A DNA stretch of 64,000 bases, taken from positions 56,358,001-56,422,000 of the forward strand of contig NC_086382.1 in the NCBI RefSeq assembly GCF_036588685.1. Direction: 5' to 3'. The DNA is from Mytilus trossulus (lineage: Eukaryota). Positions 536 through 51,600 of this stretch are shown piece by piece (positions within the stretch are counted from its first letter, which is position 1; each line of letters opens with the position of its first letter). A program made the translations under genes and the position numbers. Below the pieces are notes generated by a model. It ran no database searches, was not told where the DNA came from, and worked only from the letters and a program-made list of their open reading frames with translations.

Positions 536-713
536 AAATATTATTATACCATAGAAATACACGATATAGAATACATAATATAGCAAAAGAACAAATATAT
601 AAAAAAATAAAAAAATATGTAAGTTGAAAACTTATTTTTTTGTAAGTCTATTCTATGGTGCATATCTTCGTGTGTATGAAAAGAAAAAAGAAAAACTCAG
701 AGGAACTACTTAC

Positions 714-1201
714 ATATCTAGTGGTGAATAACCAGCTGGTTTATCACAGATCCAGCTCCTGTGTGGCAGACACTGGTCATACAAATACTTGTAGTTAGTA
801 CATACATCCATGGGTACGCCCGACACATAGGCAATGATGGCACAAGTCAGTAGTAGTTTTAACTAAAAAAAATATAATGATTATTTTTTATGCTGACTTT
901 TTCAGAAAGACATTTTAGATTTGTATGCCAATTGATCCTATTGCGGTTTAAACAGTAAAATTTGTGAAATACATGTACGGTATAAGGTTTGAATTAAGAA
1001 ATGATAATAATAAAAAACAAAAGCACTTTTGAAGAATTAGCACAAAAAGCGTTTTTGAAATAATAAATGTAACAGTTCTACCTAAACAGAGGGATTTATT
1101 ATTTATCAATTATTCAAAACTTTGTAAGATTTGATATTTTAATGGAAAACAATCTTTGAAATAAATGAATTCAAATATAACGAATTTCATTGACTTACCA
1201 T
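714..1201 (-). CDS. B0: 5' part of a divergent B-type secreted Cys-rich protein; remaining exons lie left of the window
   Basis: The coding part of exon 1 is only ATG (1201-1199), followed by gtaagt. Exon 2 is 862-714 (ttttag…gtaagt). Translation M|LKLLLTCAIIAYVSGVPMDVCTNYKYLYDQCLPHRSWICDKPAGYSPLD is a signal peptide plus the CxxYxxLYxQCLPxxxWICDK motif shared with B1-B4. Intron phases 0 and 2 match B1-B4. Confidence 0.85.
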
Positions 1202-1741: not shown

Positions 1742-3468
1742 ATGAAACATAGTCTATTTTTCCTTGCTGTATTACCATGTGTGTTTGGAATATTTGGAAA
1801 GAAATGTGTTGTTGATCCGATAGAAAACAGATGGCCGGACATGGGAAAGATATGTCATGATCCGTTAGAATATAATCAGTAAGTATACATTTTTAAAAAG
1901 TTGTTTATATTGTAAAATGCACGAATTCAAAATTCTACGCAAAAATCTCTAAATCGTTGCAGTTGGATATTGTCTATTCAAATTGCACTATTATTATCAA
2001 ACGGTCGTAATTTTAAGAAAAGTAAGAGATGTATTATGCTTATATGCCGAATACACTTCAAACACATAAGCACAATAATTGAACGAAACAAAACTATTTT
2101 TTTCTTATATAAGCTCGGAATATTATCTTGTCTTTTTGTTATATAGCACAGTGAATAAATGCCCTTTTTCTCTTTATTCAGTATTGCTATAGAACAGGCT
2201 ATAATAGATGATCCAGAAATCCAGATATATTTACAAGATGCCAGTAGAATATACCAACCAGCTGTTCCTTATGATGACCCTCAGTAAGTATATACCTATT
2301 CAATTTTGCATACTGTCAGATTTTTTTAAAACATAATAATTTTCATAGAGTGGTAAACCAAATGACAAATTAATATTCTGCATCCAGATTTTCAGCATAC
2401 CCTTTAGTGTTAAATCTTGAAAAAAGCAATAGATAGCGTCGAAAAACTATATATAAATGTTCACAAAAAATAGTTTGAGTCAGTAAAAAAACAACAATGA
2501 ATTAATAGATAACTGTAGTACCCTTTTTAGCAATGCTACATTTATACATCTCATACATGAATGATAAATTGATAACTTTTTGTCTTTTTAGTATCTGCCC
2601 CCTTGATATTGGAAATCCCAGTGGACCACAGATTGTAGAATGTGGCAGTATATGTCCCAGCTCTTACACTAACCTTACAACAGTTTGGTATGAGTACGAA
2701 CCAGGAAGGACAACCATGTGTAACGTTATGAGACCATGGCAGCAAATTGTTTATTATATGCAATGCGGGTAAGTGTACTATGAATGACACATTTTTGTTT
2801 AGGGGCAAGCAGATGCAGTCTCCGGGTGCTGGTTTGTTTTGTTGCATTGAAGACCCATTGGTGGCCTTTGGCTTTTTTTGCTCTTTGATTGTGTTGTTGT
2901 CTCTTTCATATATTCCCCATTTCCATTCTCAATTTAATTTACAAAATAAGTAAGGAAATACCAATGATTAAAGCAAATAAGTTTTAATACAACGACATTA
3001 CTATACATGACAGGCAAAGGTATAAATATGATGCAATAAAAATTGATATGCTAAAATATTCAGAAATTTTAAATTTAATGTGTTAGCTAAAACCTTTCTT
3101 GCAAATCTAAAAAAAAAAAATTTTTTTTAGTATAAATAATCTCTATGTCTAGAAATCTGATGTATAACAGAGTTCTTCGCAACAATGCATTTATATACAA
3201 TATTCACTTCCAGACAATAATTATATTTCTATTTCATTTTAGAACCAAATATCCACTGGTTGATGGTATGGATAACTCGTTCCAATGTGTACCAGAAGAT
3301 ATCATCAGACGTAAAATAGCTGTGTATTGTCCGAATATTGTACCACAATGTAGAAAAATGGATATTGATTTACCACAACACTGTGCTGCCAGCAAATTTC
3401 AATGTAGACAGAAAAAGGTTTCACAGCAATCAAAATTGGACAATCTTTTTGCTTCTTTTGGTTGGTAA
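1742..3468 (+). CDS. A0: 213-aa secreted Cys-rich protein with a degenerate Spaetzle-like cystine knot (divergent A-type paralogue)
   Basis: Exons 1742-1878, 2182-2283, 2592-2768 and 3243-3468 are all GT-AG, phase 2, and sum to 642 nt in frame. MKHSLFFLAVLPCVFGIFG signal peptide; …ICPSSYTNLT…CNVMRPWQQIVYYMQC…FQCVPEDIIRRKIAVYCP…LPQHCAASKFQC. AATAAA at ~3592. Confidence 0.9.
2810..2940 (-). repeat. Short interspersed repeat fragment; related copy on the plus strand at ~13198-13337
   Basis: Its reverse complement matches aaattgagaatggaaatggggaat…aaagagacaacaac…ggtcttcaatg at ~13200-13300. Confidence 0.65.
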
Positions 3469-8498: not shown

Positions 8499-11400
8499 TT
8501 AGAGAGGGAATGTATCGTCACATCCAACCTTTACACAACTACATGCTGTTGGGAGCTTCTCGGCATGAAGAGTTATTCTTCCATTATCACTGGGGCATAA
8601 CACTGCCATGGTTCTGGTGACGTAATTGGTTGGTCGGCAGTAATAATCTTTTTGTGGTGCATAATGAAATCTGCATTTTGTTGTTCTCTTATGGCTGTAA
8701 AATTAAAAGTAAGAATACATTAAAGTCAACAAATGAACGTCTTAATGAACATGATTTATATTTTTCTAGGAATATATTAAATGAGATGCATGTTACACCC
8801 AACAGATACAAATACCAAATTATACAAATACCAAATGATACAAATACCAAATGATCAAAATACCAAATGGTACTAAATGGTACTTGTTTACTTATTCTCT
8901 ATTCCTTATTTAGTGGCTTATAATTTTGAAAGACAGCAGCCAAACTCCAAACAAAGCAAACTTTTCTTCTATTTTGTTAGTTAATCATAGATTTCATTTT
9001 TTATAATTGAATGATTTGTATGAGACTAAATATGAACTCACCCTATACACTCCACTTTATTTATAGTTTGGAATCCTTGTTCGGTTAAAACGACCTCACA
9101 AATTTCATTGCCTATTTTTTTACCAGTCATTATTTGGTTAATGGATCTATAAATATGGGTCACAGGTGTGCGCACTTCTCTGCACATAGGAAACTTATGG
9201 ATCTTTGCCACTCTGAAATAAAAACATAGAAATATTTATCTTAATCATTTTGTGACAATGTGACCTTATTTTGATATAGATTCCATCACGGAATAGAAGA
9301 ATATTTTAAGACATATTAACAGATGGTTAAGTTTGAATTACTGTGAAATAATACTAGTAGTACTACAAACAGTTGAACGAAGTGATTGTTTTTTTTTTTA
9401 AAAGTACTGTGGATTCATTAATATTCGTTGGATACCAATTTTCGTGGGAACAGGAAAACCACGAATTCAAATGTCCAACGAAAAACAATTTTTTCTAAAG
9501 GAATGAGTGTAGACTTTGCCAAAACCACAAAATGAAATATCTACGAATATGTCAATTTTCCTCAAACCACGAAAATTAGTACCCACGAAAATAAATGAAT
9601 CCACAGTAAATTGATTTAATAATAACAATAATTACAGATTATAGAAAAGAAGATATAAAGTGGAATTATTAGAAGAAACACATTATTTGATCAGAGAAAA
9701 GTGTCTTACGATATATGTCTATCATTTGCTTTGATCTAAATCAAAATTAAAATGCTCATTATCAATATATAGCAAGGTAGAAAAACAAACATAAATTATA
9801 AGGTAAATAGTCTTTTATAGCTGACTATGCGATATGGGCTGTTCATTGTTGAAGGCCGTACGGTGACATATAGTTATTAATGTATGTGTCATTTTGGTCT
9901 CTTGTGGACAGTTGTCTCATTGGTGATCATACCACATCTTCTTTTTTATATATCAATAATAAAGTATAAACTTCTCAATGAGCTTATAATGCCGTACTAT
10001 TCGTTCTTTCTAAAAAAAAAAAAATTTAGTAAGTATTGATTGTATAATAATTCATTTAAAACCAAGCATTAAATGTGTTCAATATTAAAACTATCATCAT
10101 TATTTCTGCAATTTTCTTAAAAAAATAAAATATAAAATAATATGAACTCTATTTTCTGATTGTGAGTATTTATTTCATTCTAAAAACCAACCAGATAGAA
10201 AACATTGAAATGTGTTAATGCAAAAGATTTGTTTCAGCTTCAAATTGAAAAAGAGTTCATCTTTCAAAAACAACTCATTTAATGCTATACATTAAGAATG
10301 AAACAAAGCAAAACAAGCACTCTGACCGTTCCGTCTTAAGACATTTCTGAAGATAACATTATAGAGTCGTCAGTGCTTTCTTGAAATTTTCTATTTATAA
10401 AATTTATTTACCCAGTTCCTCTGAAATCATCTACTGCATTTTGTTTAGAGAATATATGGTTTGAGACACCGTTGCATTCTTTGCTGTGTTTTAAGTAACT
10501 CACAAATTTTATATCTGAGTCTTTCATTGCTTGGCGGCTGTAAGAGAGAGAGAGTTATATTTATATCTCATCAAATAGTCAATCACATCTTTAATTTCAA
10601 GATTGTGCAATAAGCTTTAGCTGTATGTAGAGATACGATGATTTACTTGGTATGAAGCGGTATGATGATTCATTTAGTATACAATGGAAGCATAATTTGA
10701 CTAATCTACTTATTTTCATATTCGTACACAATGAATGTTATGATATATATACAAAATTATGAAATATCAGAGCTAGCGAATGTTATTTTTTAAATTTGTA
10801 TTTGCATTAAGTGAAGCATGTGTGTTAACTCTAATCTTTGATCCTAACTTTTTGCACGTTTTGTTGTAACATATCACCAACCTTATCTCAGAAGTGCTGC
10901 CATTGTATTTTTAATTATTGCACAATCATGGCATTTATTTTGAGTTTACTTATTAATAACATTTTGTATGATAAGAGTACTTACATGTTATATCTAACGT
11001 AGGTTTCTGGGATCTGACTCTTATCACAAATCCATTCCTGTGGTGGGAGACATTGTTTATACAACAAGTCGTATTTCTGACAGAGTTGCCATTTATTACC
11101 CTTATGTGGATCAGGGAGAGCAGTGGCAAGCGTCACAGCTATGACAGCAATATACAGTTGAAGTGGAACCTGAGAGAATATAAATACATGTTTTAAATAA
11201 ATGTCGTACAGCTATCTTTAGTTTTATCTATTTAATGATAAGTGGAATTATATGCGTAAAGATTATCAAGCATTACTACTAATAGTTTTATATATTTAAA
11301 CAAGATAGGCTTTAATATTTTCAAATGAATGAAAAGTCATCATGCTCAAATAAACGAACCACTATAAGTTGAATATATAAAGTTGAAGTGGAACCTGATA

Positions 11401-14096: not shown

Positions 14097-16358
14097 ATGG
14101 TAAGAGAAGTATTCTTTAATTAATGATATTTTAGTTTAGTAAAGCTGCATACACTATTATATTGTAAGTTAACACATTTGATATAAAAATCATTTTTAGA
14201 TGATTGGTAATATAAAAGTAAAGTATAGCACTGTAATATTTAACATTGGTTCTTTTATATCAAGACATTTTATTTACAAATGTGAATGAAATCGTGTTAT
14301 AACAATTGAAAACTTATCTTTTATCTAGATGACTATGTTTATTGTTTGGTTTGCGGTACTAGGAGTCACTGGAGCTTACAAGTGTATGGATCCTCCAGAA
14401 ATGCATTGGCCTGATAAGGTCAGAATATGTGATGGAGAATTTGGAAGTAGTCCTGGATGTAATGATGACTATACAGTCCCGTATAACCAGTAAGTACATC
14501 CTTGAGCCAGAAATATTCTAGACACATTACAAGTATTATTAAACTTCCTAACTTAAAAATTTGAAAATTGCACTTAAATGATTTTCAACAGATTTTATGA
14601 ATTAAAACTGTGTATGTATTTAGCAGCAGTCGATTTCGAATTTATATGACTATCCGAATATTAGATTTTTACATCAATTTCGTAGAGGTTTGTTGTCTAA
14701 TTGCTTGTAATAAAGAATTTGCTCAACTCTATATTTTAGTAATCGCTTCGTATGAATTTTATTTTCATTTGTATCTATTTTTCAGTTATCATATAGAAAA
14801 CGCCCTTCAAGCTGACAGAGATCTTCTATCCTTCGTTGAGGATTCTTGTAAAATATACTCTCCAGAACTTCCCCTTGAATATGAGTAAGTTTTGATTAAT
14901 ATCTATCAGTAATTATAATGACATTCGCCAAAATCGAAGGGCTATATGTTGTAACGAGGTTGTGTGTTACTTGTTGCTATCTGAATGTTCCAAATTCCTC
15001 AAAAAGGATAACCAACTTTCTTAATAGATATAACAAATCATCAATGAAATAATATTTATCAATTTCATCCTTCCGAATCGATCACCTTGCTTTATTTTCA
15101 TCAAGAGCGCCTAAACACAAAATATTGAAAAACCAAAAATGTTTAGATAAATGAAAAAGTTATGAGCTATGTCATTATAATGGACATTAAACGAATGTTT
15201 TATACATTGATAAATATAATTAAGATGTATTATCATTAGATATTTTATTAAAACACAGTCATATCATTTATGACCACTTTTGTATTACTACAAAGTAATA
15301 GCATTCATCAACAATATGATATTACAACACAGTCAGAACATTTATCAACACTTTTTTTTTTATTACAAGTCCTTCACAATGTGTTATAACAACACAGAGA
15401 CGTCATGACACTCGTCCACACCGGGTAGTCACAATACAAGTGTTATGACATCAAAGTTCTAAATTTTAACAGCATTTTATTATTACTAGAAAGTTACAAC
15501 ATTTAATCGCAACGTGTGATATTTCAACAGAGTCATATAATATATGGTTGTGAAATGACCTGGACGGCTAGAAATCATAAGAAACATATAGTCTATTATT
15601 TTTCCATTCCGTACAAATTTATATGATTCCCCCCCTTTTTAGACAATGTCCAATTGATGGTGGTGATCTTGGAAAAACGCTAGGCAGATGTGAGAAAGTT
15701 TGTGATGGCAATTATGTTAATGTAACAGCTGTGAATGTGCAAATGGTAGACGAAAAAACAAAAAGCTTTAGATGGAGCAAATGTTATGTTATACGTCCAT
15801 GGGAACAGAAAGTTTACTATATGAAGTGCAAGTAAGTAGTTATATCACTCAAAGCTGTTTTTTCTAATGAACTTTTTTCAATTTTCAATTATTATTATCA
15901 TTGAAGTAGAGGTGGTATCAAAAAGTCAAATATGTTCACATGTATTGATTGTGATACTTCGTTTAATATCTTATCAACCTTTCTTCTCTATTTATTTTTC
16001 AAGTTTACTAATTGGTAAATGATGAGATTCAGGCTCATCTTCTTAAATACTTTATTATGTTTGATGGAAATTGAAGATTACAGGCTTCTTTATCTAAATC
16101 AAACAAATAGTTATTTGATATTTTTTAAATTTCAGAAGTGATCGACCTACTTTTGAGAGCAGTTCATTTAAGTGTGTTCCAGACAACTTTATCAGACGTA
16201 GGGTTGCTGTTTTCTGTCCAGAATTCAAAGAGCACCAATGTCAAAAAGTGGACCTCGAATTACCAACTAATTGTGCTGCAAGCCGATTTGAATGTGTCCA
16301 ACCGAAGAAAACAAAGCAACAAAGCGTAGACAGCTTTTTCGATTCATTGTTTTTGTAG
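14097..16358 (+). CDS. A1: 224-aa secreted Cys-rich protein with a degenerate Spaetzle-like knot
   Basis: Exons 14097-14099 (ATG), 14329-14489, 14786-14884, 15643-15831 and 16136-16358; phases 0,2,2,2. MMTMFIVWFAVLGVTGA signal peptide; …KVCDGNYVNVT…KCYVIRPWEQKVYYMKC…FKCVPDNFIRRRVAVFCP…LPTNCAASRFEC. AATAAA at 16590. Confidence 0.92.
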
Positions 16359-22324: not shown

Positions 22325-25300
22325 TTAGAGAATTCTTTTTGGTGTGAATGTATCGTCACATCCAACCTTTACACAACTACATGCTGTTGGGATCTTCTCG
22401 GCATGGAGAGTTATTCTTCCATTGTCACTGGGGCATAACACTGCCATGGTTCTGGTGACGTAATTGGTTGGTCGGCAGTAATAATCCTTTTGTGGGGCAT
22501 AATGGAATCTACATTTTGTTGTTCTCTTATGGCTGTAAAATTAAAAGTAAGAACAAATTAAGTTAACATAAACATGAAAACTTTTTGCTGGGATTACGTT
22601 TAACGCTAGACATATGTGAGGGTCTGGATGGGCGGCTTTCATTTCCATAGTTTTTATTTTTTGGTTATTCCCCTCCCCCATTTTCAATTGTGTTTCCTCA
22701 TTATTCTTTATTCCTTATTTTTTCTAACTAATTTTCTCTTCTTTTTTCCCCGATTTTCTGCATTTTTTGTCCTTTATCATCTATCCTGTAAACCCCACCC
22801 ATTCCTTAATGTGTCTCATACATTTACGATAGGATAAAACAATACATGTAGATTAGAAAAAAACCACAGACTGATTACTAGCTATAAGGGACAAGATCGA
22901 AAAGTATGGGAAGAGAGAGATCGTTAATAATTCGTTAAAAAAGATATCGGGGACTGTCGAAAGTAATAGACAATACAACAGACATTACCAACCATTTCCA
23001 TCCGACACCTATTGATAAAGTACAATAGACAAACAACAAGGAATAGGGTTGATATAGACTAACATGAAACTGGCTCACTATTTTTGGGCCATCGCAGTTT
23101 AACATGCGCAAATATGTATGTTTTAGAATATGAAATTTAGAAACTCGTTAACTGGACCAACACACACATTACAATCTAGGGATTACCACAAATATGAATC
23201 ATTAGGATCAGTAACACGTACATAGTCACGTTTGGACTATATATCAATTTAGGCTTACTACAGTAGCATGTCTTTTTTCTTGGATTTGTTGCCATTTGAT
23301 TCAGAAATATTTAACGTTTTTTCTCTCTCATTTTCTGTATTCAATCGTTCATTATGAAAACATGAATAAGATGAAGTGTTACTTATACTTAAGAAAGACA
23401 TCCACCAAATTCTAAACAAAATTTTCTTCTATTTTTACATTATTTTTGGTTGATCTTAGTGTTAATTTTTTTTATAACTAAATGATATGTTTGAGACTAA
23501 AAATTGACTCACCCTATACACTCCACTTTATAAATTGTTTGGACTCCTTGTTCGCTTAAAACGACTTCACAAATTTCATCGCCCAGTTTTTTACCAGTCA
23601 TTATTTGGTTGATGGATCTATAAATATGGGTCACAGGTGTGCGCACTTCTCTGCACATAGGAAATTTATGGATCTTTGCCATTTTCGTCATTCTGAAATA
23701 AAAACATGGTTATATTTATCTAAACCATTTTGTTCTAATGCAGTTTTTATCACGAAATAGAAGAATATTGTAAGACATGTTAACAGATGGTAAAGTTTAA
23801 ATAACCGTGAAATGTTACTAGTAGTACTGCAAACAGCATTAATTCGATATAAAATGTGTTCAAAATTAAAACTAGCATCATTATTTCTGCAATATTCTAA
23901 AATAAGAAATAATTAAAAGAATCTGAGCTCTATTTTGTGATTGTGAGTATTTATTTCCTACAAAAGAACCAACCAGATAAAAACCATTGAAATGTGTTTA
24001 TGTAAAATATTAGTATCAGCTCCAAATTGAACAAGAGTTCAACTTTCAAAAAACTCATTTAGGTGCTATGGGTTTAGAATGAAACAAAAAGAAATAATAT
24101 GCACTCTGACCGTTCCGTGTAAAGACATTTCTGAAGAAACCATTATAAAATTGCAGTGGTGACTTAAATTTTCTTTTTTTTAAATGTATTTACCCAGTTC
24201 CTCTGACATCCTCTACTGCATTTTGTTTAGAGAATATATGTTTTGAGACACCATCGCATTCTTTGCTGTGTTTTAAGTAATTCACAAAACTTCCATCTGA
24301 GTCTGTCATTGCTTGACGGCTGTAAGAGAGAGTTTTATTTAAATCTCATCAAATAGTCAATCATATCTTTAATGTCAAGGCTGTTCAATAAGCTTTTACT
24401 GTATGTAGAGATAAGATGTTTTAATTGGTATGAGGCAGTAAGATGATTTATTTAGTATTAAATGGAAGCATAATTTGACTAATCTACTTATATTTATATT
24501 AAAACACAATGACTGCTATGCTATACAAAATGATGAAATATCGGAGCTAGCGATTGTTTTTTTAAAAAAAATTGTATTTGTTTTTGTCTTAAGTGAAGCG
24601 TGTGTGTGAATTCTGATCCTTGATCTTTACGTTTTGCACTTTTTGTTGTAACATATCACCAAAGTTTTAATGGACTTTAGGTAAACCTCAACGATTACCT
24701 CGAGAATCTCATTTATTTTCTCAGAAATGCTCTCATTATATTTTTAATTATTGCATAGTCATGGCATCTATGATGAGTTTATTTATTAAAAACATTTTGA
24801 ATGATAACAGTACTTACATGTTATATCTAACGTAGCTTTCTGGGACCTTACTCTTATCACATATCCATTCCTGTGGTGGTAGACATTGTCTATACAACAA
24901 GTCGTATTTCTGACAGAGCTGAAATTTCTTACTCATCGGATTAGGGAGAGCAGTTGCAAGCGTCACAGCTATGACAGCAATGTACAGTTGAAGTGGAATC
25001 TGAGAAAAAATCAACACATGTTTTAAATGTCGTACAGCTATCTTTGGTTTCATCTATTTAATGATAAGTTTTGGTCACAGGAATAATATGCGTAAAGATT
25101 ATTAAGCATTACTACTAATACTTTTATATATGTAAACAAGATATTAATATTTTCAAATAAATGAAAAGACATCATGCTCAAATAAACGAACCACTACTAG
25201 TTGAATATATAAAGTTGAAGTGGAACCTGATAGAAAATAAATACATATTTTCTAAATAAATGTCTTTAGGCTATCTTTTATTTATTAATTCAATAAACAG

Positions 25301-26346: not shown

Positions 26347-28624
26347 ATGGTAAGAGAAGTATTCTTTAATTAATGATATTTTAGTTTAGTAAAGCTGCAT
26401 ACACTATTATATTGTAAGTTAACACATTTTATATAAAAATCATTTTTAGATGATTGGTAATATAAAAGTAAAGTATAGCACTGTAATATTTAACATTGGT
26501 TCTTTTATATCAAGACATTTTATTTACAAATGTGAATGAAATCGTGTTATAACAATTGTAAACTTATCTTTTATCTAGATGACTATGTTTATTGTTTGGT
26601 TTGCGGTACTAGGAGTCACTGGAGCTTACAAGTGTATGGATCCTCCAGAAATGCATTGGCCTGATAAGGTCAGAATATGTGATGGAGAATTTGGAAGTAG
26701 TCCTGGATGTAATGATGAATATACAGTCCCGTATAACCAGTAGGTACATCCTTGAGCCAGAAATATTCTACACACATTACAAGTATTATTAAACTTCCTA
26801 ACTTAAAAATTTGAAAATTGCACTTGAATGATTTTCAACAGATTTTATGAATTAAAACTGTGTATGTATTTAGCAGCAGTCGATTTCTAATTTATATGAC
26901 TATCCGAATATTAGATTTTTACATCAATTTCGTAAAGGTTTGTTGTCTAATTGCTTGTAATAAGAATTTGCTCAACTCTATATTTTATTAATCGCTTCGT
27001 ATGGATTTTATTTTCATTTGTATCTATTTTTCAGCTATCATATAGAAAGCGCCCTTCAAGCTGACAGAGATCTTCTATCCTTCGTTGAGGATTCTTGTAA
27101 AATATACTCTCCAGAACTTCCCCTTGAATATGAGTAAGTTTTGATTAATATCTATCAGTAATTATAATGACATTCGCCAAAATCGAAGGGCTATATGTTG
27201 TAACTAGGTTGTGTGTTACTTGTTGTTATCTGAATGTTCCAAATTCCTCAAAAAGGATAACCAACTTTCTTAATAGATATAACAAATCATCAATGAAATA
27301 ATATTTATCAATTTCATCCTTCCGAATCGATCACCTTGCTTTATTTTCTTCAAGAGCGCCTAAACACAAAATATTGAAAAACCAAAAATGTATAGATAAA
27401 TGAAAAAGTTATGAGCTATGTCACTATAATGGACATTAAACGAATGTTTTATACATTGATAAATATAATTAAGATGTATTCTCATTAGATATTTTATTAA
27501 AACACAGTCATATCATTTATGACCACTTTTGTATTACTACAAAGTAATAGCATTCATCAACAATATGATATTACAACACAGTCAGAACATTTATCAACAC
27601 TTTTTTTTTACTACAAGTCATCCACACTGTGTTATTACAACACAGAGACGTCATGACAATCGTTCTCACCGTGTGGTTTCAATACAATCATCAAATCTTT
27701 TCATAACGTCTTATGACATCAAAGTTCTAAATTTTAACAGTATTTTATTATTACAAGAAAGTTACAACATTTAATCGCAACGTGTGATATTTCAACAAAG
27801 TCAAATATATGGTTATGAAATTACCTGGACGGCTAGAAATCATAAGAAACATATAGTCTATTATTTTTCTATTCCGTACAAATTTATATGATTCCCCCCC
27901 CTTTTTAGACAATGTCCAATTGATGGTGGTGATCTTGGAAAAACGCTAGGCAGATGTGAGAAAGTTTGTGATGGCAATTATGTTAATGTAACAGCTGTGA
28001 ATGTGCAAATGGTAGACGAAAAAACAAAAAGCTTTAGATGGAGCAAATGTTATGTTATACGTCCATGGGAACAGAAAGTTTACTATATGAAGTGCAAGTA
28101 AGTAGTTATATCACTCAAAGCTGTTTTTTCTAATGAACTTTTTTCAATTTTCAATTATTATTATCATTGAAGTAGAGGTGGTATCAAAAAGTCAAATATG
28201 TTCACATGTATTGATTGTGATACTTCGTTTAATATCTTATCAACCTTTCTTCTCTATTTATTTTTCAAGTTTACTAATTGGTAAATGATGAGGTTCAGGC
28301 TCATCTTCTTAAATACTTTATTATGTTTGATGGAAATTGAAGATTACAGGCTTCTTTATCTAAATCAAAAAAATAGTTATTTGATTTTTTTTTAATTTCA
28401 GAAGTGATCGACCTACTTTTGAGAGCAGTTCATTTAAGTGTGTTCCAGACAACTTTATCAGACGTAGGGTTGCTGTTTTCTGTCCAGAATTCAAAGAGCA
28501 CCAATGTCAAAAAGTGGACCTCGAATTACCAACTAATTGTGCTGCAAGCCGATTTGAATGTGTCCAACCGAAGAAAACAAAGCAACAAAGCGTAGACAGC
28601 TTTTTCGATTCATTGTTTTTGTAG
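26347..28624 (+). CDS. A2: 224-aa degenerate-knot protein
   Basis: Exons 26347-26349, 26579-26739, 27035-27133, 27909-28097 and 28402-28624; frame intact. Confidence 0.92.
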
Positions 28625-35391: not shown

Positions 35392-38300
35392 TTATAGAAT
35401 TCTTTTTGTTGTGAATGTATCGTCACATCCAACCTTTACACAACTACATGCTGTTGGGATCTTCTCGGCATGGAGAGTTATTCTTCCATTGTCACTAGGG
35501 CATAACACTGCCATGGTTCTGGTGACGTAATTGGTTGGTCGGCAGTAATAATCCTTTTGTGGGGCATAATGGAATCTACATTTTGTTGTTCTCTTATGGC
35601 TGTAAAATTAAAAGTAAGAACAAATTAAGTTAACATAAATATGATAATTTTTTGCTGGAATTACGTTAAATGAGATGCAGGCTACACTCCAATGATACAA
35701 ATAACCCAAGGTATATAATGAAAGTGAACACAAGTCTTCAACGCTAGACATATGTGATGGGCGGCTTTCATTTCCATAGTTTTTATTTTTTGGTAATTCC
35801 CCTCCCCCATTTTCAATTGTGTTTCCTCATTATTCTCTATTCCTTATTTTTTTGGACTATTTTTCTTTTCTTTTTTCACCGATTTTCTGCATTTTTTGTC
35901 CTTTATCCTCTATCCTGTAAAACCCACCCAGACTTAATGTGTCTCATACATTTACGATGGGGTAAAACAATACATGTAGATTAGAAAAAAACACAGACTG
36001 ATTACTAGCTATAAGGGACAAGATCGAAAAGTATGGGAAGAGAGAGATCGTTAATAATTCGTTAAAAAAGATATCGGGGACTGTCGAAAGTAATAGACAA
36101 TACAACAGACATTACCAACCACTTCCATCCGACACCTATTGATAAAGTACAATAGACAAACAACAAGGAATAGGGTTGATATAGACTAACATGAAACTGG
36201 TCCACTATTGTTGGGCCATCGCAGTTCAACATGCGCAAATATGTATGTTTTAGAATATGAAATTTAGAAACTCATTAACTGGACCAACACACACATTACA
36301 ATCTAGGGATTACCACAAATATGAATCATTAGGATCAGTAACACGTACATAGTCACGTTTGGACTCTATATCAGTTTAGCCTTACTACAGTAGCATGTCT
36401 TTTTTCTTGGATTTGGTGCCATTTGATTCAGAAATATTTAACGTTTTTTCTCTCTCATTTTCTGTATTCAATCGTTCATTATGAAAACATGAATAAGATG
36501 AAGTGTTACTTATACTTAAGAAAGACATCCACCAAATTCTAAACAAAACTTTCTTCTATTTTTACATTATTTTTGGTTGATCTTAGTGTTAATTGTTTTA
36601 TAACTAAATGATATGTTTGAGACTAAAAATTAACTCACCCTATACACTCCACTTTATAAATTGTTTGGACTCCTTGTTCGCTTAAAACGACTTCACAAAT
36701 TTCATCCCCCAGTTTTTTACCAGTCATTATTTGGTTGATGGATCTATAAATATGGGTCACAGGTGTGCGCACTTCTCTGCACATAGGAAATTTATGGATC
36801 TTTGCCATTTTCGTCATTCTGAAATAAAAACATGGTTATATTTATCTAAATCATTTTGTTCTAATGCAGTTTTTATCACGAAATAGAAGAATATTGTAAG
36901 ACATGTTAACAGATGGTAAAGTTTAAATAACTGTGAAATGTTACTAGTAGTACTGCAAACAGCATTAATTCGATATAAAATGTGTTCAAAATTAAAAATA
37001 GCATCATTATCTCTGCAATATTCTAAAAAAAGAAATAATTAAAAGAATCTGAGCTCTATTTTGTGATTGTGAGTATTTATTTCCTACAAAAGAACCAACC
37101 AGATAGAAAACATTGAAATGTGTTTATGTAAAAGATTAGTATCAGCTCCAAATTGAACAAGAGTTCAACTTTCAAAAAACAACTCATTTAGGTGCTATGG
37201 GTTTAGAATGAAACAAAAAGAAATAATATGCACTCTGACCGTTCCGTGTAAAGACATTTCTGAAGAAACCATTTTAAAATTGCAGTGGTGACTTAAAATT
37301 TTCTATTTTTAAAATGTATTTACCCAGTTCCTCTGACATCCTCTACTGCATTTTGTTTAGAGAATATGTGTTTTGAGACACCATCGCATTCTTTGCTGTG
37401 TTTTAAGTAATTCACAAAACTTCCATCTGAGTCTGTCATTGCTTGACGGCTGTAAGAGAGAGTTTTATTTAAATCTCATCAAATATCAATCACATCTTTA
37501 ATGTCAAGGCTGTTCAATAAGCTTTTACTGTATGTAGAGATAAGATGTTTTAATTGGTATGAGGCAGTAAGATGATTTATTTAGTATTAAATGGAAGCAT
37601 AATTTGCCTCATCTACTTATATTTATATTAAAACACAATGACTGCTATGCTATACAAAATGATGAAATATCGGAGCTAGCGATTGTTTTTTTTTAATTTG
37701 TATTTGTTTTTGTCTTAAGTGAAGCGTGTGTGTGAATTCTGATCCTTGATCTTTACGTTTTGCACTTTTTGTTGTAACATATCACCAAAGTTTTAATGGA
37801 CTTTAGGTAAACCTCAACGATTACCTCGAGAATCTCATTTATTTTCTCAGAAGTGCTCTCATTATATTTTTAATTATTGCATAATCATGGCATCTATGAT
37901 GAGTTTATTTATTAATAACATTTTGAATGATAAGAGTACTTACATGTTATATCTAACGTAGTTTTCTGGGACCTTACTCTTATCACATATCCATTCCTGT
38001 GGTGGTAGACATTGTCTATACAACAAGTCGTATTTCTGACAGAGCTGAAATTTCTTACTCATCGGATTAGGGAGAGCAGTTGCAAGCGTCACAGCTATGA
38101 CAGCAATGTACAGTTGAAGTGGAATCTGAGAAAAAATCAACACATGTTTTAAATGAATGTCGTACAGCTATCTTTGGTTTCATCTATTTAATGATAAGTT
38201 TTGGTCACAGGAATAATATGCGTAAAGATTATCAAGCATTACTACTAATACTTTTATATATGTAAACAAGCTATTAATATTTTCAAATAAATGAAAATAC

Positions 38301-39476: not shown

Positions 39477-41843
39477 ATGGTAAGAGAAGTATTCTTTAAT
39501 TAATGATATTTTAGTTTAGTAAAGCTGCATACACTATTATATTGTAAGTTAACACATTTTATATAAAAATCATTTTTAGATGATTGGTAATATAAAAGTA
39601 AAGTATAGCACTGTAATATTTAACATTGGTTCTTTTATATCAAGACATTTTATTTACAAATGTGAATGAAATCGTGTTATAACAATTGTAAACTTATCTT
39701 TTATCTAGATGACTATGTTTATTGTTTGGTTTGCGGTACTAGGAGTCACTGGAGCTTACAAGTGTATGGATCCTCCAGAAATGCATTGGCCTGATAAGGT
39801 CAGAATATGTGATGGAGAATTTGGAAGTAGTCCTGGATGTAATGATGAATATACAGTCCCGTATAACCAGTAGGTACATCCTTGAGCCAGAAATATTCTA
39901 GACACATTACAAGTATTATTAAACTTCCTAACTTAAAAAATTGAAAATTGCACTTGAATGATTTTCAACAGATTTTATGAATTAAAACTGTGTATGTATT
40001 TAGCAGCAGTCGATTTCTAATTTATATGACTATCCGAATATTAGATTTTTACATCAATTTCGTAAAGGTTTGTTGTCTAATTGCTTGTAATAAAGAATTT
40101 GCTCAACTCTATATTTTATTAATCGCTTCGTATGGATTTTATTTTCATTTGTATCTATTTTTCAGCTATCATATAGAAAGCGCCCTTCAAGCTGACAGAG
40201 ATCTTCTATCCTTCGTTGAGGATTCTTGTAAAATATACTCTCCAGAACTTCCCCTTGAATATGAGTAAGTTTTGATTAATATCTATCAGTAATTATAATG
40301 ACATTCGCCAAAATCGAAGGGCTATATGTTGTAACGAGGTTGTGTGTTACTTGTTGTTATCTGAATGTTCCAAATTCCTCAAAAAGGATAACCAACTTTC
40401 TTAATAGATATAACAAATCATCAATGAAATAATATTTATCAATTTCATCCTTCCGAATCGATCACCTTGCTTTATTTTCTTCAAGAGCGCCTAAACACAA
40501 AATATTGAAAAACCAAAAATGTATAGATAAATGAAAAAGTTATGAGCTATGTCACTATAATGGACATTAAACGAATGTTTTATACATTGATAAATATAAT
40601 TAAGATGTATTCTCATTAGATATTTTATTAAAACACAGTCATATCATTTATGACCACTTTTGTATTACTACAAAGTAATAGCATTCATCAACAATATGAT
40701 ATTACAACACAGTCAGAACATTTATCAACACTTTTTTTTACTACAAGTCATCCACACTGTGTTATTACCACACAGAGACGTCATGACAATCGTTCTCACC
40801 GTGTGGTTTCAATACAATCATCAAATCTTTTCATAACGTCTTATGACATCAAAGTTCTAAATTTTAACAGCATTTTATTATTACAAGAAAGTTACAACAT
40901 TTAATCGCAACGTGTGATATTTCAACAAAGTCAAATATATGGTTATGAAATTACCTGGACGGCTAGAAATCATAAGAAACATATAGTCTATTATTTTTCT
41001 ATTCCGTACAAATTTATATGATTCCCCCCCTTTTTAGACAATGTCCAATTGATGGTGGTGATCTTGGAAAAACGCTAGGCAGATGTGAGAAAGTTTGTGA
41101 TGGCAATTATGTTAATGTAACAGCTGTGAATGTGCAAATGGTAGACGAAAAAACAAAAAGCTTAAGATGGAGCAAATGTTATGTTATACGTCCATGGGAA
41201 CAGAAAGTTTACTATATGAAGTGCAAGTAAGTAGTTATATCACTCAAAGCTGTTTTTTCTAATGAACTTTTTTCAATTTTCAATTATTATTATCATTGAA
41301 GTAGAGGTGGTATCAAAAAGTCAAATATATCACTCAAAGCTGTTTTTTCTAATGAACTTTTTTCAATTTTCAATTATTATTATCATTGAAGTAGAGGTGG
41401 TATCAAAAAGTCAAATATGTTCACATGTATTGATTGTGATACTTCGTTTAATATCTTATCAACCTTTCTTCTCTATTTATTTTTCAAGTTTACTAATTGG
41501 TAAATGATGAGGTTCAGGCTCATCTTCTTAAATACTTTATTATGTTTGATGGAAATTGAAGATTACAGGCTTCTTTATCTAAATCAAAAAATTAGTTATT
41601 TGATTTTTTTTTAATTTCAGAAGTGATCGACCTACTTTTGAGAGCAGTTCATTTAAGTGTGTTCCAGACAACTTTATCAGACGTAGGGTTGCTGTTTTCT
41701 GTCCAGAATTCAAAGAACACCAATGTCAAAAAGTGGACCTCGAATTACCAACTAATTGTGCTGCAAGCCGATTTGAATGTGTCCAACCGAAGAAAACAAA
41801 GCAACAAAGCGTAGACAGCTTTTTCGATTCATTGTTTTTGTAG
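39477..41843 (+). CDS. A3: 224-aa degenerate-knot protein
   Basis: Exons 39477-39479, 39709-39869, 40166-40264, 41038-41226 and 41621-41843; intact, with F-to-L in KSLRW. Confidence 0.92.
41236..41415. repeat. 90-bp tandem duplication private to A3 intron 4
   Basis: 41236-41325 is repeated at 41326-41415; single copy in A1, A2 and A4. Confidence 0.9.
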
Positions 41844-48600: not shown

Positions 48601-51600
48601 TTATAGAATTCTTTTTGTTGTGAATGTATCGTCACATCCAACCTTTACACAACTACATGCTGTTGGGATCTTCTCGGCATGGAGAGTTATTCTTCCATTG
48701 TCACTAGGACATAACACTGCCATGGTTCTGGTGACGTAATTGGTTGGTCGGCAGTAATAATCTTTTTGTGGGGCATAATGGAATCTACATTTTGTTGTTC
48801 TCTTATGGCTGTAAAATTAAAAGTAAGAACAAATTAAGTTAACATAAATATGATATTTTTTTGCTGGAATTACGTTAAATGAGATGCAGGCTACACTCCA
48901 ATGATACAAATAACCCAAGGTATATAATGAAAGTGAAGTCTTCAACGCTAGACATATGTGATGGGCGGCTTTCATTTCCATAGTTTTTATTTTTTGGTAA
49001 TTCCCCTCCCCCATTTTCAATTGTGTTTCCTCATTATTCTCTATTCCTTATTTTTTTTGACTATTTTTCTTTTCTTTTTTCACCGATTTTCTGCATTTTT
49101 TGTCCTTTATCCTCTATCCTGTAAAACCCACCCAGACTTAATGTGTCTCATACATTTACGATGGGGTAAAACAATACATGTAGATTAGAAAAAAACACAG
49201 ACTGATTACTAGCTGTAAGGGACAAGATCGGAAAGTATGGGAAGAGAGAGATCGTTAATAATTCGTTAAAAAAGATATCGGGGACTGTCGAAAGTAATAG
49301 ACAATACAACAGACATTACCAACCACTTCCATCCGACACCTATTGATAAAGTACAATAGACAAACAACAAGGAATAGGGTTGATATAGACTAACATGAAA
49401 CTGGTCCACTATTGTTGGGCCATCGCAGTTCAACATGCGCAAATATGTATGTTTTAGAATATGAAATTTAGAAACTCATTAACTGGACCAACACACACAT
49501 TACAATCTAGGGATTACCACAAATATGAATCATTAGGATCAGTAACACGTACATAGTCACGTTTGGACTCTATATCAGTTTAGCCTTACTACAGTAGCAT
49601 GTCTTTTTTCTTGGATTTGGTGCCATTTGATTCAGAAATATTTAACGTTTTTTCTCTCTCATTTTCTGTATTCAATCGTTCATTATGAAAACATGAATAA
49701 GATGAAGTGTTACTTATACTTAAGAAAGACATCCACCAAATTCTAAACAAAACTTTCTTCTATTTTTACATTATTTTTGGTTGATCTTAGTGTTAATTGT
49801 TTTATAACTAAATGATATGTTTGAGACTAAAAATTAACTCACCCTATACACTCCACTTTATAAATTGTTTGGACTCCTTGTTCGCTTAAAACGACTTCAC
49901 AAATTTCATCCCCCAGTTTTTTACCAGTCATTATTTGGTTGATGGATCTATAAATATGGGTCACAGGTGTGCGCACTTCTCTGCACATAGGAAATTTATG
50001 GATCTTTGCCATTTTCGTCATTCTGAAATAAAAACATGGTTATATTTATCTAAATCATTTTGTTCTAATGCAGTTTTTATCACGAAATAGAAGAATATTG
50101 TAAGACATGTTAACAGATGGTAAAGTTTAAATAACTGTGAAATGTTACTAGTAGTACTGCAAACAGCATTAATTCGATATAAAATGTGTTCAAAATTAAA
50201 AATAGCATCATTATCTCTGCAATATTCTAAAAAAAGAAATAATTAAAAGAATCTGAGCTCTATTTTGTGATTGTGAGTATTTATTTCCTACAAAAGAACC
50301 AACCAGATAGAAAACATTGAAATGTGTTTATGTAAAAGATTAGTATCAGCTCCAAATTGAACAAGAGTTCAACTTTCAAAAAACAACTCATTTAGGTGCT
50401 ATGGGTTTAGAATGAAACAAAAAGAAATAATATGCACTCTGACCGTTCCGTGTAAAGACATTTCTGAAGAAACCATTTTAAAATTGCAGTGGTGACTTAA
50501 AATTTTCTATTTTTAAAATGTATTTACCCAGTTCCTCTGACATCCTCTACTGCATTTTGTTTAGAGAATATGTGTTTTGAGACACCATCGCATTCTTTGC
50601 TGTGTTTTAAGTAATTCACAAAACTTCCATCTGAGTCTGTCATTGCTTGACGGCTGTAAGAGAGAGTTTTATTTAAATCTCATCAAATATCAATCACATC
50701 TTTAATGTCAAGGCTGTTCAATAAGCTTTTACTGTATGTAGAGATAAGATGTTTTAATTGGTATGAGGCAGTAAGATGATTTATTTAGTATTAAATGGAA
50801 GCATAATTTGCCTCATCTACTTATATTTATATTAAAACACAATGACTGCTATGCTATACAAAATGATGAAATATCGGAGCTAGCGATTGTTTTTTTTTTT
50901 TTAATTTGTATTTGTTTTTGTCTTAAGTGAAGCGTGTGTGTGAATTCTGATCCTTGATCTTTACGTTTTGCACTTTTTGTTGTAACATATCACCAAAGTT
51001 TTAATGGACTTTAGGTAAACCTCAACGATTACCTCGAGAATCTCATTTATTTTCTCAGAAGTGCTCTCATTATATTTTTAATTATTGCATAATCATGGCA
51101 TCTATGATGAGTTTATTTATTAATAACATTTTGAATGATAAGAGTACTTACATGTTATATCTAACGTAGTTTTCTGGGACCTTACTCTTATCACATATCC
51201 ATTCCTGTGGTGGTAGACATTGTCTATACAACAAGTCGTATTTCTGACAGAGCTGAAATTTCTTACTCATCGGATTAGGGAGAGCAGTTGCAAGCGTCAC
51301 AGCTATGACAGCAATGTACAGTTGAAGTGGAATCTGAGAAAAAATCAACACATGTTTTAAATGAATGTCGTACAGCTATCTTTGGTTTCATCTATTTAAT
51401 GATAAGTTTTGGTCACAGGAATAATATGCGTAAAGATTATCAAGCATTACTACTAATACTTTTATATATGTAAACAAGCTATTAATATTTTCAAATAAAT
51501 GAAAATACATCATGCTCAAATAAACGAACCACTACTAGTTGAATATATAAAGTTGAAGTGGAACCTGATAGAAAATAAATACATATTTTCTAAATAAATG

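What the first reader, a model, noticed from the sequence alone, without database searches (positions are those of the whole stretch)
15643..16358. A-type proteins have lost exactly one knot disulfide pair (C3 and C6)
Seen: B has C1 (PMC), C2 (VEC), C3 (TKC), C4 (YYC) and C5-x-C6 (ACSC). All A copies, including divergent A0 and A5, keep C1, C2, C4 and C5, have no Cys between C2 and C4, and read C-A-A in place of C-S-C, with the next Cys at identical spacing. Established: growth-factor knots pair C1-C4, C2-C5 and C3-C6. Inference: the paired loss supports the fold assignment and means A cannot close the knot ring. A has extra cysteines (QCP, GRC, HQC) that may compensate.
Basis: partly seen in the sequence, partly recalled or inferred. 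Interest (0 to 1): 0.8.

Follow-up and report, generated by a model that had tools for sequence, protein, structure and literature searches.

The report
Mussel cystine-knot protein missing its ring disulfide
One of two paired mussel genes for secreted growth-factor-like proteins has lost the two cysteines that close the fold's disulfide ring, an old, conserved change shared with oysters and scallops, so it is a natural unknotted version of a fold usually defined by that knot.

Summary
The window holds a ~13 kb tandem unit from a Mytilus-like genome with two four-exon paralogues, A (+) and B (-), lying head to head.

- **Coordinates:** 15643-16358 is exactly exon 3 to the stop of copy A1. Spliced contigs from 4 runs confirm all three GT..AG introns.
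- **Cysteines:** all 10 A-type last exons in the genome read C-A-A-S, and all 9 B-type read A-C-S-C.
- **Pairing:** of 62 distinct family domain sequences, 38 have both C3 and C6, 24 have neither and 0 have only one.
- **Taxa:** every named knotless protein is from a pteriomorph bivalve (Mytilus, Crassostrea, Saccostrea, Pinctada, Mizuhopecten). Solemya, Mya, unionids and gastropods keep the full knot.
- **Origin:** one loss is not rejected (AU p 0.48).
- **Function:** A paralogues are under purifying selection, dN/dS 0.05-0.28.
- **Fold:** AF2 models of A and B hit only cystine-knot cytokines in the PDB, weakly. No Pfam family reaches its threshold.

The scan noted this family before on neighbouring DNA (s1-820611). 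Verdict: a new variant of a known kind, of moderate interest.

The parts
14329..14489 (+). A1 coding exon 1: start codon, hydrophobic signal-like N-terminus, three cysteines (YKC, RIC, PGC)
   Evidence: ORF and donor read. Joint 14489|14786 seen in contigs of 3 runs. Matches P0031 residues 2-55.
14786..14884 (+). A1 coding exon 2: helical segment (HIENALQADRDLLSFVEDSCKIYSPELPLEYE)
   Evidence: Joints 14489|14786 and 14884|15643, GT..AG. 100% match to P0031 residues 57-88. Modelled as helices with pLDDT 92-95.
15643..15831 (+). A1 coding exon 3: QCP, GRC, C1 (KVC), the extra Cys SKC and C2 (MKC), forming finger 1
   Evidence: Joints 14884|15643 and 15831|16136. Translation. Alignment with B.
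16136..16358 (+). A1 coding exon 4 with stop: C4 (FKC), VFC, HQC, C5 (TNC), Ala at the C6 position, and the last Cys (FEC). There is no C3.
   Evidence: hhalign against the B clade gives probability 97%.
1742..3465 (+). A0: the divergent older A paralogue, about 40% identical to A1, four exons, reads QHCAASKFQC
   Evidence: Orthologues of the P0002 cluster occur in five Mytilus species.
26579..28621 (+). A2: near-identical tandem copy of A1
39709..41840 (+). A3: near-identical tandem copy of A1
52950..54991 (+). A4: near-identical tandem copy of A1
58862..61067 (+). A5: an A paralogue 84-88% identical to A1, with a one-base gap that breaks the frame of exon 3 near 60250. It still reads TNCAASRFEC.
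22328..25002 (-). B2: the full-knot paralogue. Four exons at about 25002-24817, 24318-24193, 23694-23512 and 22532-22328, carrying PMC, EIC, VEC | TKC, YYC, VLC, ACSC, VGC.
   Evidence: The last exon gives a sub-threshold Pfam Spaetzle match, E 0.009. The exon 1 start and the splice sites of B were not confirmed by reads.
8502..11169 (-). B1: B copy with a shorter C-terminal tail
35395..38125 (-). B3: B copy
48604..51333 (-). B4: B copy
713..841 (-). First exon of B0, the older B paralogue. It lies head to head with A0, and the rest of the gene is upstream of the window.
   Evidence: tblastn with P0009 and P0004. Its last exon is locus L019.

Best explanation
A1 is a transcribed, spliced, four-exon gene. 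Its product of about 224 aa is probably secreted and belongs to an unnamed, mollusc-wide family of growth-factor-type cystine-knot proteins, closest in shape to Spaetzle/NGF and to sclerostin/DAN.

The ancestral domain had eight paired cysteines plus a C-terminal one: C1-C4, an extra pair SKC-VFC, C2-C5 and C3-C6. In the A lineage of pteriomorph bivalves (mussels, oysters, pearl oysters, scallops), C3 and C6 were lost together. These two form one of the two ring-closing disulfides.

The result is a two-finger beta-hairpin domain held by the remaining disulfides, with no closed ring and therefore no threaded knot. The protein has been kept under purifying selection since then, so it works without the knot.

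Shown here: gene structure, transcription, the cysteine pattern and its taxonomic spread, homology of A to B, and selection. Inferred: which cysteines pair, secretion, the absence of a ring, and any signalling role.
For: **Gene model and transcription.** Three GT..AG joints appear in contigs of 4 runs from 3 studies. The nearest database protein is P0031, M. trossulus LOC134686388.

**Cysteine pattern.**. In the 42-row alignment, the C3 and C6 columns hold Cys in the same 26 rows and in none of the other 16. Over 62 distinct domains the counts are 38 with both, 24 with neither and 0 with one. Three of the 38 had C3 shifted by the aligner and were checked by eye.

**Taxa.** Knotless proteins come from five Mytilus species (both A lineages), Crassostrea virginica, two Saccostrea species, Pinctada imbricata and Mizuhopecten yessoensis. 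Full-knot proteins come from Solemya, Mya, Potamilus, Sinanodonta, Haliotis, Gigantopelta, Patella and the oyster B type.

**Tree.** The A and B clades split with support 85/91. Thirteen knotless rows form a clade (82/89). Holding all 14 together costs 0.91 lnL, AU p 0.478.

**Homology of A to B.** hhalign probability 97%, E 9.4e-11, over 95 columns.

**Selection.** dN/dS is 0.05-0.28 across five A paralogue pairs.

**Fold.** AF2 gives pLDDT 79 and pTM 0.69 for A, and 69.4 and 0.59 for B0. Foldseek lists only cystine-knot cytokines. A profile search of PDB sequences finds sclerostin at E 0.0058. In the ESM Atlas, 17 of 30 neighbours carry Spaetzle, score 0.92.
Against: - No Pfam family reaches its gathering score. 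The best are Spaetzle at E 0.0038, DAN at 0.006 and Sclerostin at 0.03, each in only 4-5 of 42 members.
- Foldseek E-values are weak (2.5e-3 at best) with TM-scores of 0.2-0.6, and the VIA-align libraries were unavailable.
- No coordinates were returned, so no disulfide could be read from the models. The pairing is inferred from co-occurrence and from the known topology of the fold.
- The ML tree leaves the long-branched scallop protein outside the knotless clade, so two losses are as possible as one.
- The runs are labelled RNA only by a guess, and A1-A4 cannot be told apart in the contigs.
- Nothing here shows secretion, a receptor or a phenotype.
Confidence: 0.8

Rival explanations
1. A and B are co-expressed from a shared bidirectional promoter and act together as an A/B heterodimer, or as a ligand with its modulator. 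The knotless A would be the specialised partner of the knotted B, as in other heterodimeric cystine-knot ligands. This extends the best explanation and does not replace it.
For: - Head-to-head A/B pairs recur. B0/A0 starts lie about 0.9 kb apart, B2/A2 1.57 kb and B1/A1 3.15 kb.
- The same A(-)/B(+) arrangement occurs twice at a second locus near 74.53-74.55 Mb.
- Old and young A/B lineages have both kept the pairing, and the pair is amplified as one unit.
- Cysteine counts made by eye from the sequences: the young B has 13 (odd) and the A types have 10, 12 or 14 (even).
Against:
- No multimer prediction is on offer.
- Adjacency can simply reflect tandem duplication history.
Confidence: 0.2
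2. Other cysteines in A (GRC four residues before C1, HQC, QCP or the last Cys) take the place of C3-C6 in space, so that A still has a closed ring or an equivalent staple.
For: - GRC is invariant in all 12 aligned knotless proteins. It lies next to C1, at the base of the domain where the last Cys also lies.
- GRC and a helix-region Cys are mutually exclusive across the family, which suggests a partner switch near the knot.
Against: - GRC also occurs with an intact knot in Solemya P0006 and Mya P0024/P0080.
- HQC occurs in all A-clade members, full-knot ones included.
- QCP is found only in Mytilus.
- No cysteine column appears only where C3 and C6 are missing. A staple outside the C2..C3 and C5-x-C6 backbone would not recreate the ring.
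Confidence: 0.15
3. The A copies are decaying duplicates of a B-like gene, or artefacts of assembly or annotation, and the missing cysteines reflect loss of function.
For: A5 has a frame-breaking one-base gap in exon 3. The tandem array could also inflate the copy number.
Against: - The other five A copies in the window have open exons.
- Spliced contigs cover all the exon junctions.
- dN/dS is 0.05-0.28.
- The same state is found in five Mytilus species and four other pteriomorph genera, and nine other cysteines are invariant.
- The units differ by 2-4% in DNA, so they are not collapsed duplicates.
Confidence: 0.03
4. The family is a divergent IL-17, the known cystine-knot cytokine that naturally lacks one knot disulfide, and A simply shows the IL-17 state.
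For: IL-17A and IL-17F chains appear among the Foldseek hits for both models. IL-17 genes are expanded in marine molluscs (PMC8353272; only the listing and abstract were seen).
Against: - No Pfam IL17 match in any of the 42 members at E up to 1.
- B and most of the family carry all six knot cysteines plus an extra pair.
- As I recall it, IL-17 keeps the C-x-C ring cysteines and lacks the threading pair. A lacks a ring pair, which is the opposite.
Confidence: 0.04

Closest known systems
Spaetzle / neurotrophin (NGF) cystine-knot ligands
   Same: - A secreted precursor with an N-terminal region and a C-terminal two-finger knot domain.
- B's spacing C3-x11-C4 and C5-x-C6 matches NGF's as I recall it (Cys68-80, Cys108-110).
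- Sub-threshold Pfam Spaetzle hits, neurotrophins at the top of the B0 fold search and Spaetzle clusters nearest in the ESM Atlas.
   Different: - Below Pfam's threshold.
- An extra invariant cysteine pair and a C-terminal Cys 7 residues after C5.
- No dibasic or Spaetzle-type cleavage site is evident before the knot domain of Mytilus A.
- A lacks C3-C6 altogether.
Sclerostin / DAN family (BMP and Wnt antagonists)
   Same: - The motif C-[VI]-P-D-x-[FY]-...-C-P, with exactly 13 residues between the two cysteines, followed by C-x-C.
- It aligns to sclerostin at E 0.0058.
- Sclerostin is the top Foldseek hit for A.
- Eight-cysteine logic: a knot plus one extra finger disulfide.
- Gastropod members have a C-x3-C ring segment, as in eight-membered-ring knots.
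   Different: - Pfam Sclerostin and DAN matches are sub-threshold.
- The C2-C3 spacing ranges from 3 to 16 residues.
- An N-terminal helical, cysteine-bearing region is present.
- The family is found only in molluscs.
IL-17 family (a natural cystine-knot fold with only two of the three knot disulfides)
   Same: It is a precedent for a functional cytokine that keeps the fold without a complete knot. IL-17 chains appear among the fold hits.
   Different: As I recall it, IL-17 lacks the threading disulfide and keeps the ring. A lacks a ring disulfide. There is no Pfam IL17 match.
Engineered disulfide-deficient VEGF-A mutants (PDB 1MJV, 1MKK)
   Same: They are experimental cases of a growth-factor knot with one disulfide pair replaced by alanines that still crystallised. 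They appear among the Foldseek hits to the A model (ranks 9 and 37; only the titles were seen).
   Different: They are laboratory mutants of an unrelated knot family. A is a natural, anciently fixed state.

Membership tests
Growth-factor cystine-knot fold (structural superfamily) | Two long beta-hairpin fingers joined at a disulfide-rich base | tested here: met
   AF2 strands 110-123, 130-150, 162-177 and 186-201, with pLDDT about 90. All listed Foldseek PDB hits are cystine-knot cytokines, but the E-values are only 2.5e-3 to 0.2.
Growth-factor cystine-knot fold (structural superfamily) | Six knot cysteines including C5-x-C6 | tested here: not met
   B and 38 of 62 distinct family domains have them. 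A and 24 of 62 lack C3 and C6. A is therefore a derived, unknotted member of the lineage and not a canonical knot.
Growth-factor cystine-knot fold (structural superfamily) | A ring closed by two disulfides and threaded by a third | not testable with these tools
   Structure prediction returns no coordinates. The pairing is inferred from co-occurrence and the known topology.
Spaetzle (Pfam PF16077) | Score at or above Pfam's gathering threshold (27 bits) | tested here: not met
   B's last exon scores 17 bits, E 0.0091. 5 of 42 members match at E up to 1, best 0.0038. A proteins have no hit.
NGF / neurotrophin (Pfam PF00243) | A Pfam match | tested here: not met
   No NGF row. The only support is fold-level similarity.
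DAN (PF03045) / Sclerostin (PF05463) | Score at or above the gathering thresholds (22 and 27 bits) | tested here: not met
   DAN scores 14.5 bits and Sclerostin 13-15 bits. 5 and 4 of 42 members match. The PDB profile hit to sclerostin has E 0.0058.
IL-17 (PF06083) | A Pfam match and the four-cysteine IL-17 pattern | tested here: not met
   No IL17 row among 42 members. The cysteine pattern differs.
Unnamed mollusc cystine-knot family (A and B clades) | Significant sequence homology to its other members over the knot domain | tested here: met
   28 library proteins at E up to 1e-3. All named ones are molluscan and annotated as uncharacterised or hypothetical. The A profile against the B profile gives hhalign 97%, E 9.4e-11.

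The most novel reading that the evidence does not exclude
Knotless A and knotted B, encoded head to head and amplified as one unit, form an obligate heterodimeric extracellular ligand in pteriomorph bivalves. Loss of A's ring disulfide would have freed finger flexibility for pairing with B or for a new receptor surface. The pair would be one of the long-sought endogenous ligands of the expanded mollusc Toll-like or neurotrophin-type receptors.
Probability: 0.12. Interest if true: 0.75.

Novelty: new variant of a known kind. Interest (0 to 1): 0.45.

Why it matters
The cystine knot is usually treated as the defining and stabilising core of this fold. Here a natural lineage discarded one ring disulfide, probably once in the ancestor of mussels, oysters and scallops. 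It kept the protein under purifying selection, while sister proteins with the intact knot survive in the same genomes.

That gives a ready-made natural comparison for asking what the knot contributes to folding, stability and receptor binding. It complements IL-17 and the engineered VEGF mutants.

It also adds detail to an uncharacterised, mollusc-only ligand-like family. Papers on mollusc Toll-like receptors still leave open whether an endogenous ligand exists (PMC3788107, passages seen).

The practical stakes are modest. No function is known, and a precedent for incomplete knots already exists.

Tried and rejected
- **First gene model.** My first model for A had three coding exons, joining 14329-14490 straight to 15643. 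It was wrong. P0031 and the spliced contigs show a fourth exon at 14786-14884, and exon 1 ends at 14489. One public M. edulis model, P0034, has the same three-exon form.
- **IL-17 idea.** I first suspected an IL-17-like protein because of the C-x-C motif. I dropped this after Pfam gave no IL17 hit and B showed all six knot cysteines.
- **B's first exon.** A candidate signal exon for B at 23881 did not fit the reading phase. tblastn with P0004 and P0009 placed exon 1 at about 25002-24817.
- **C3 counting rule.** A rule that called C3 present if any Cys lay 8-14 residues before C4 miscounted C2 as C3 in 5 young Mytilus A proteins. I replaced it with an alignment count.
- **Word-indexed homologue searches.** They added few sequences: 7, 13 and 13 hits.
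- **Rows left out.** P0007 and P0010, two long multi-stretch hits, were never fetched or examined. 15 of the 89 stored proteins lacked the core motif and were left out of the counts; they are fragments, those two, and P0026, which has Ser at one Cys. Six fragments were left out of the tree.
- **Literature.** Five searches found no paper describing this family or its sequences. Only open-access PMC and bioRxiv were searched. No supplements were consulted.
- **Papers seen.** I saw passages of PMC3788107 and PMC5484132, and the listing and abstract of PMC8353272. The NGF, sclerostin and IL-17 disulfide numbering and the VEGF mutant work are recalled, not read.
Full report
**What is in the window.**

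The window is AT-rich (32% GC) with no N. It maps to contig C10 of a 1.3 Gb assembly. The closest proteins are all from Mytilus species.

tblastn of the two ORF pieces inside the finding against the window shows a tandem unit of about 13 kb. It carries one A gene on the + strand and one B gene on the - strand. There are six A copies:
- A0 is divergent.
- A1-A4 are near-identical.
- A5 is 84-88% identical.

There are four B copies, plus the first exon of an older B0 at 841-713. The units are 96-98% identical in DNA, so they are real duplicates and not a collapsed artefact.

**Gene model and transcription.**

A1 has four coding exons: 14329-14489, 14786-14884, 15643-15831 and 16136-16358.

Contigs from four public runs (three studies, kind given as "RNA?" by a guess) skip exactly the three introns, with GT..AG ends (14489|14786, 14884|15643, 15831|16136). 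Contigs lie on the exons and the 3' UTR. A1-A4 are too alike to say which copy is the source.

The finding's coordinates therefore run exactly from the exon 3 acceptor to the stop codon. P0031 (M. trossulus LOC134686388, 224 aa) matches the window's exons at 97-100%. I used it as the full-length stand-in, because exons were not to be joined.

B has the same four-exon layout, and in both genes an intron falls two residues after C2. B's splice sites were not checked with reads.

**The observation.**

- Every A copy keeps C1, C2, C4, C5 and the last Cys, with no Cys between C2 and C4.
- Every A copy reads C-A-A-S where B reads C-S-C-V, and the next Cys has the same offset.
- B has PMC, VEC, TKC, YYC and ACSC as stated.
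- In the whole genome, 10 of 10 A-type last exons read CAAS and 9 of 9 B-type read ACSC. All lie on C10, at 56.35-56.45 Mb and 74.53-74.55 Mb.

**The wider family.**

A profile of the A and B last exons found 28 proteins at E up to 1e-3 among 1.84 billion representatives. I fetched 26 of them. P0007 and P0010, two long multi-stretch hits, were not examined. Every named relative is molluscan and annotated only as uncharacterised or hypothetical.

In a 42-row alignment the C3 and C6 columns hold Cys in the same 26 rows. Over the 74 stored proteins that carry the core motif there are 62 distinct domains: 38 have both, 24 have neither and none has one. Three of the 38 had C3 shifted by the aligner and were verified.

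| State | Taxa |
|---|---|
| Knotless (all Pteriomorphia) | Five Mytilus species in both A lineages (C-A-A), Crassostrea virginica (C-V-L), two Saccostrea species and Pinctada (C-S-L), Mizuhopecten (C-S-P) |
| Full knot | Solemya, Mya, unionids, Haliotis, Gigantopelta, Patella, and the B-type proteins of oysters and mussels |

So C-A-A is invariant within Mytilus but not beyond it. What is invariant is the absence of both cysteines.

**Direction and number of events.**

The tree was built on 116 columns with the two trait columns removed. It separates a B clade, all full-knot, from an A clade (support 85/91). The A clade holds both states.

Thirteen knotless rows form a clade (82/89). The long-branched scallop protein is unresolved, so the tree needs two changes, although its starred branches allow one.

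Forcing all 14 together costs 0.91 lnL, AU p 0.478. One ancestral loss in pteriomorphs is compatible with the data and two losses are not excluded. The rows are kin, so the clean 38/24/0 split reflects one or two events, each of which removed both partners.

**Is A functional?**

- dN/dS between A paralogues is 0.05-0.28. It was computed per exon on exons 3 and 4, with the counts then summed.
- Nine cysteines of the domain are invariant across 12 knotless proteins from five genera.
- Only A5 shows a frame break.

**Fold and family.**

- AF2 with the 42-row alignment gives A a pLDDT of 79 and pTM of 0.69. Two N-terminal helices and long paired strands are modelled at about 90.
- B0 (P0009) gets 69.4 and 0.59.
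- Foldseek against the PDB returns only cystine-knot cytokines for both. For A these are sclerostin (2.5e-3), NGF, VEGF, IL-17 and gremlin. For B0 they are BDNF/NT-3 (9.7e-3), IL-17A and NGF.
- These E-values are weak, and the VIA-align libraries were not available.
- At sequence level nothing passes a curated threshold. Spaetzle, DAN and Sclerostin each appear in 4-5 of 42 members at E of 0.004-0.03.
- A profile search of PDB sequences finds sclerostin at E 0.0058 through the shared C-x13-C-P ... C-x-C stretch.
- ESM Atlas neighbours are mostly Spaetzle-bearing clusters at score 0.92. This is a lead only.
- The knotless A profile against the B clade gives hhalign probability 97%, E 9.4e-11.

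I therefore file the proteins in the growth-factor cystine-knot superfold as an unnamed mollusc family, not as Spaetzle, NGF, DAN or IL-17.

**Which disulfide is gone.**

With eight paired cysteines in the order a, b, c, d | e, f, g, h, both the NGF-type and the sclerostin-type registers give the pairs a-e, b-f, c-g and d-h. They differ only in whether a-e or b-f threads the ring. In both, d-h (C3-C6) closes the ring together with c-g. Losing it leaves no ring. This is inference from known topology.

**Compensation.**

- HQC is present in every A-clade sequence, with or without the knot, and absent from the B clade.
- GRC is in all knotless proteins, but also in full-knot Solemya P0006 and Mya P0024/P0080.
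- QCP is Mytilus-only.
- No cysteine appears only where C3 and C6 are missing.
- GRC and a helix-region Cys are mutually exclusive across the family. This looks like a partner switch that came before the loss and may have made C3-C6 dispensable. That is speculation.

**Context and mechanism.**

A and B lie head to head in every unit and in the older pair. The same arrangement occurs twice at the second locus. This invites the idea of co-regulation and of an A/B complex. I could not test co-expression, a multimer model or synteny in other species.

My best reading, at 0.8 confidence: A is a functional, probably secreted, unknotted derivative of a mollusc cystine-knot ligand-like family. Its role as a signalling ligand or as a partner of B is untested.

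**What is known, and novelty.**

Five literature searches found no description of this family. Papers on oyster and bivalve Toll-like receptors still raise the question of a Spaetzle-like endogenous ligand (PMC3788107 and PMC5484132, passages seen).

The scan had already flagged the family on neighbouring DNA (s1-820611) and on another piece (s1-829904). New here are the ancient paired loss, its restriction to pteriomorphs, and the evidence that the knotless form is maintained.

Natural (IL-17) and engineered (VEGF) incomplete knots are precedents. I therefore rate this a new variant of a known kind, with interest 0.45.

Noticed in passing
window 12280-12840 (-): An ORF with a GIY-YIG nuclease domain (Pfam E 1.3e-7, above threshold), probably part of a mobile element. 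It sits in the B1/A1 head-to-head spacer, which is 3.15 kb long against 1.57 kb for B2/A2.
   Followed up: partly
window 17965-19893 (+): Broken reverse-transcriptase ORFs (RVT_1, E 2.5e-13, at 18961-19239) in the tail-to-tail spacer between A1 and B2: a retroelement remnant.
   Followed up: partly
window 60219-60409 (+), A5 exon 3: A one-base gap relative to A1 splits the exon into two overlapping frames. A5 may be a pseudogene or an assembly slip. It still reads TNCAASRFEC.
   Followed up: partly
family alignment; in P0031 the residues around 76-78 and 104: A helix-region Cys and the GRC Cys (four residues before C1) are mutually exclusive over 62 distinct domains. This suggests a disulfide-partner switch that predates the loss of C3 and C6.
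   Followed up: partly
G000:C10:74531434-74549900 (loci L009, L010, L017, L018): A second locus 18 Mb away holds two more head-to-head pairs of A0-like and B0-like genes. Beyond the window's right edge lie inverted copies (L005, L006 and L014 at 56.43-56.45 Mb).
   Followed up: partly
window 14489|14786-14788: The acceptor of intron 1 differs by 1-2 bases between contigs of different runs, with one or two unmatched letters at the joint. This may be allelic or copy-specific variation, or contig ends.
   Followed up: no
window 8502-8693 (-), B1 last exon: B1 ends four residues earlier (…DDTFPL) than B2-B4 (…DDTFT[PT]KRIL). The tail after the last Cys varies among the B copies.
   Followed up: no
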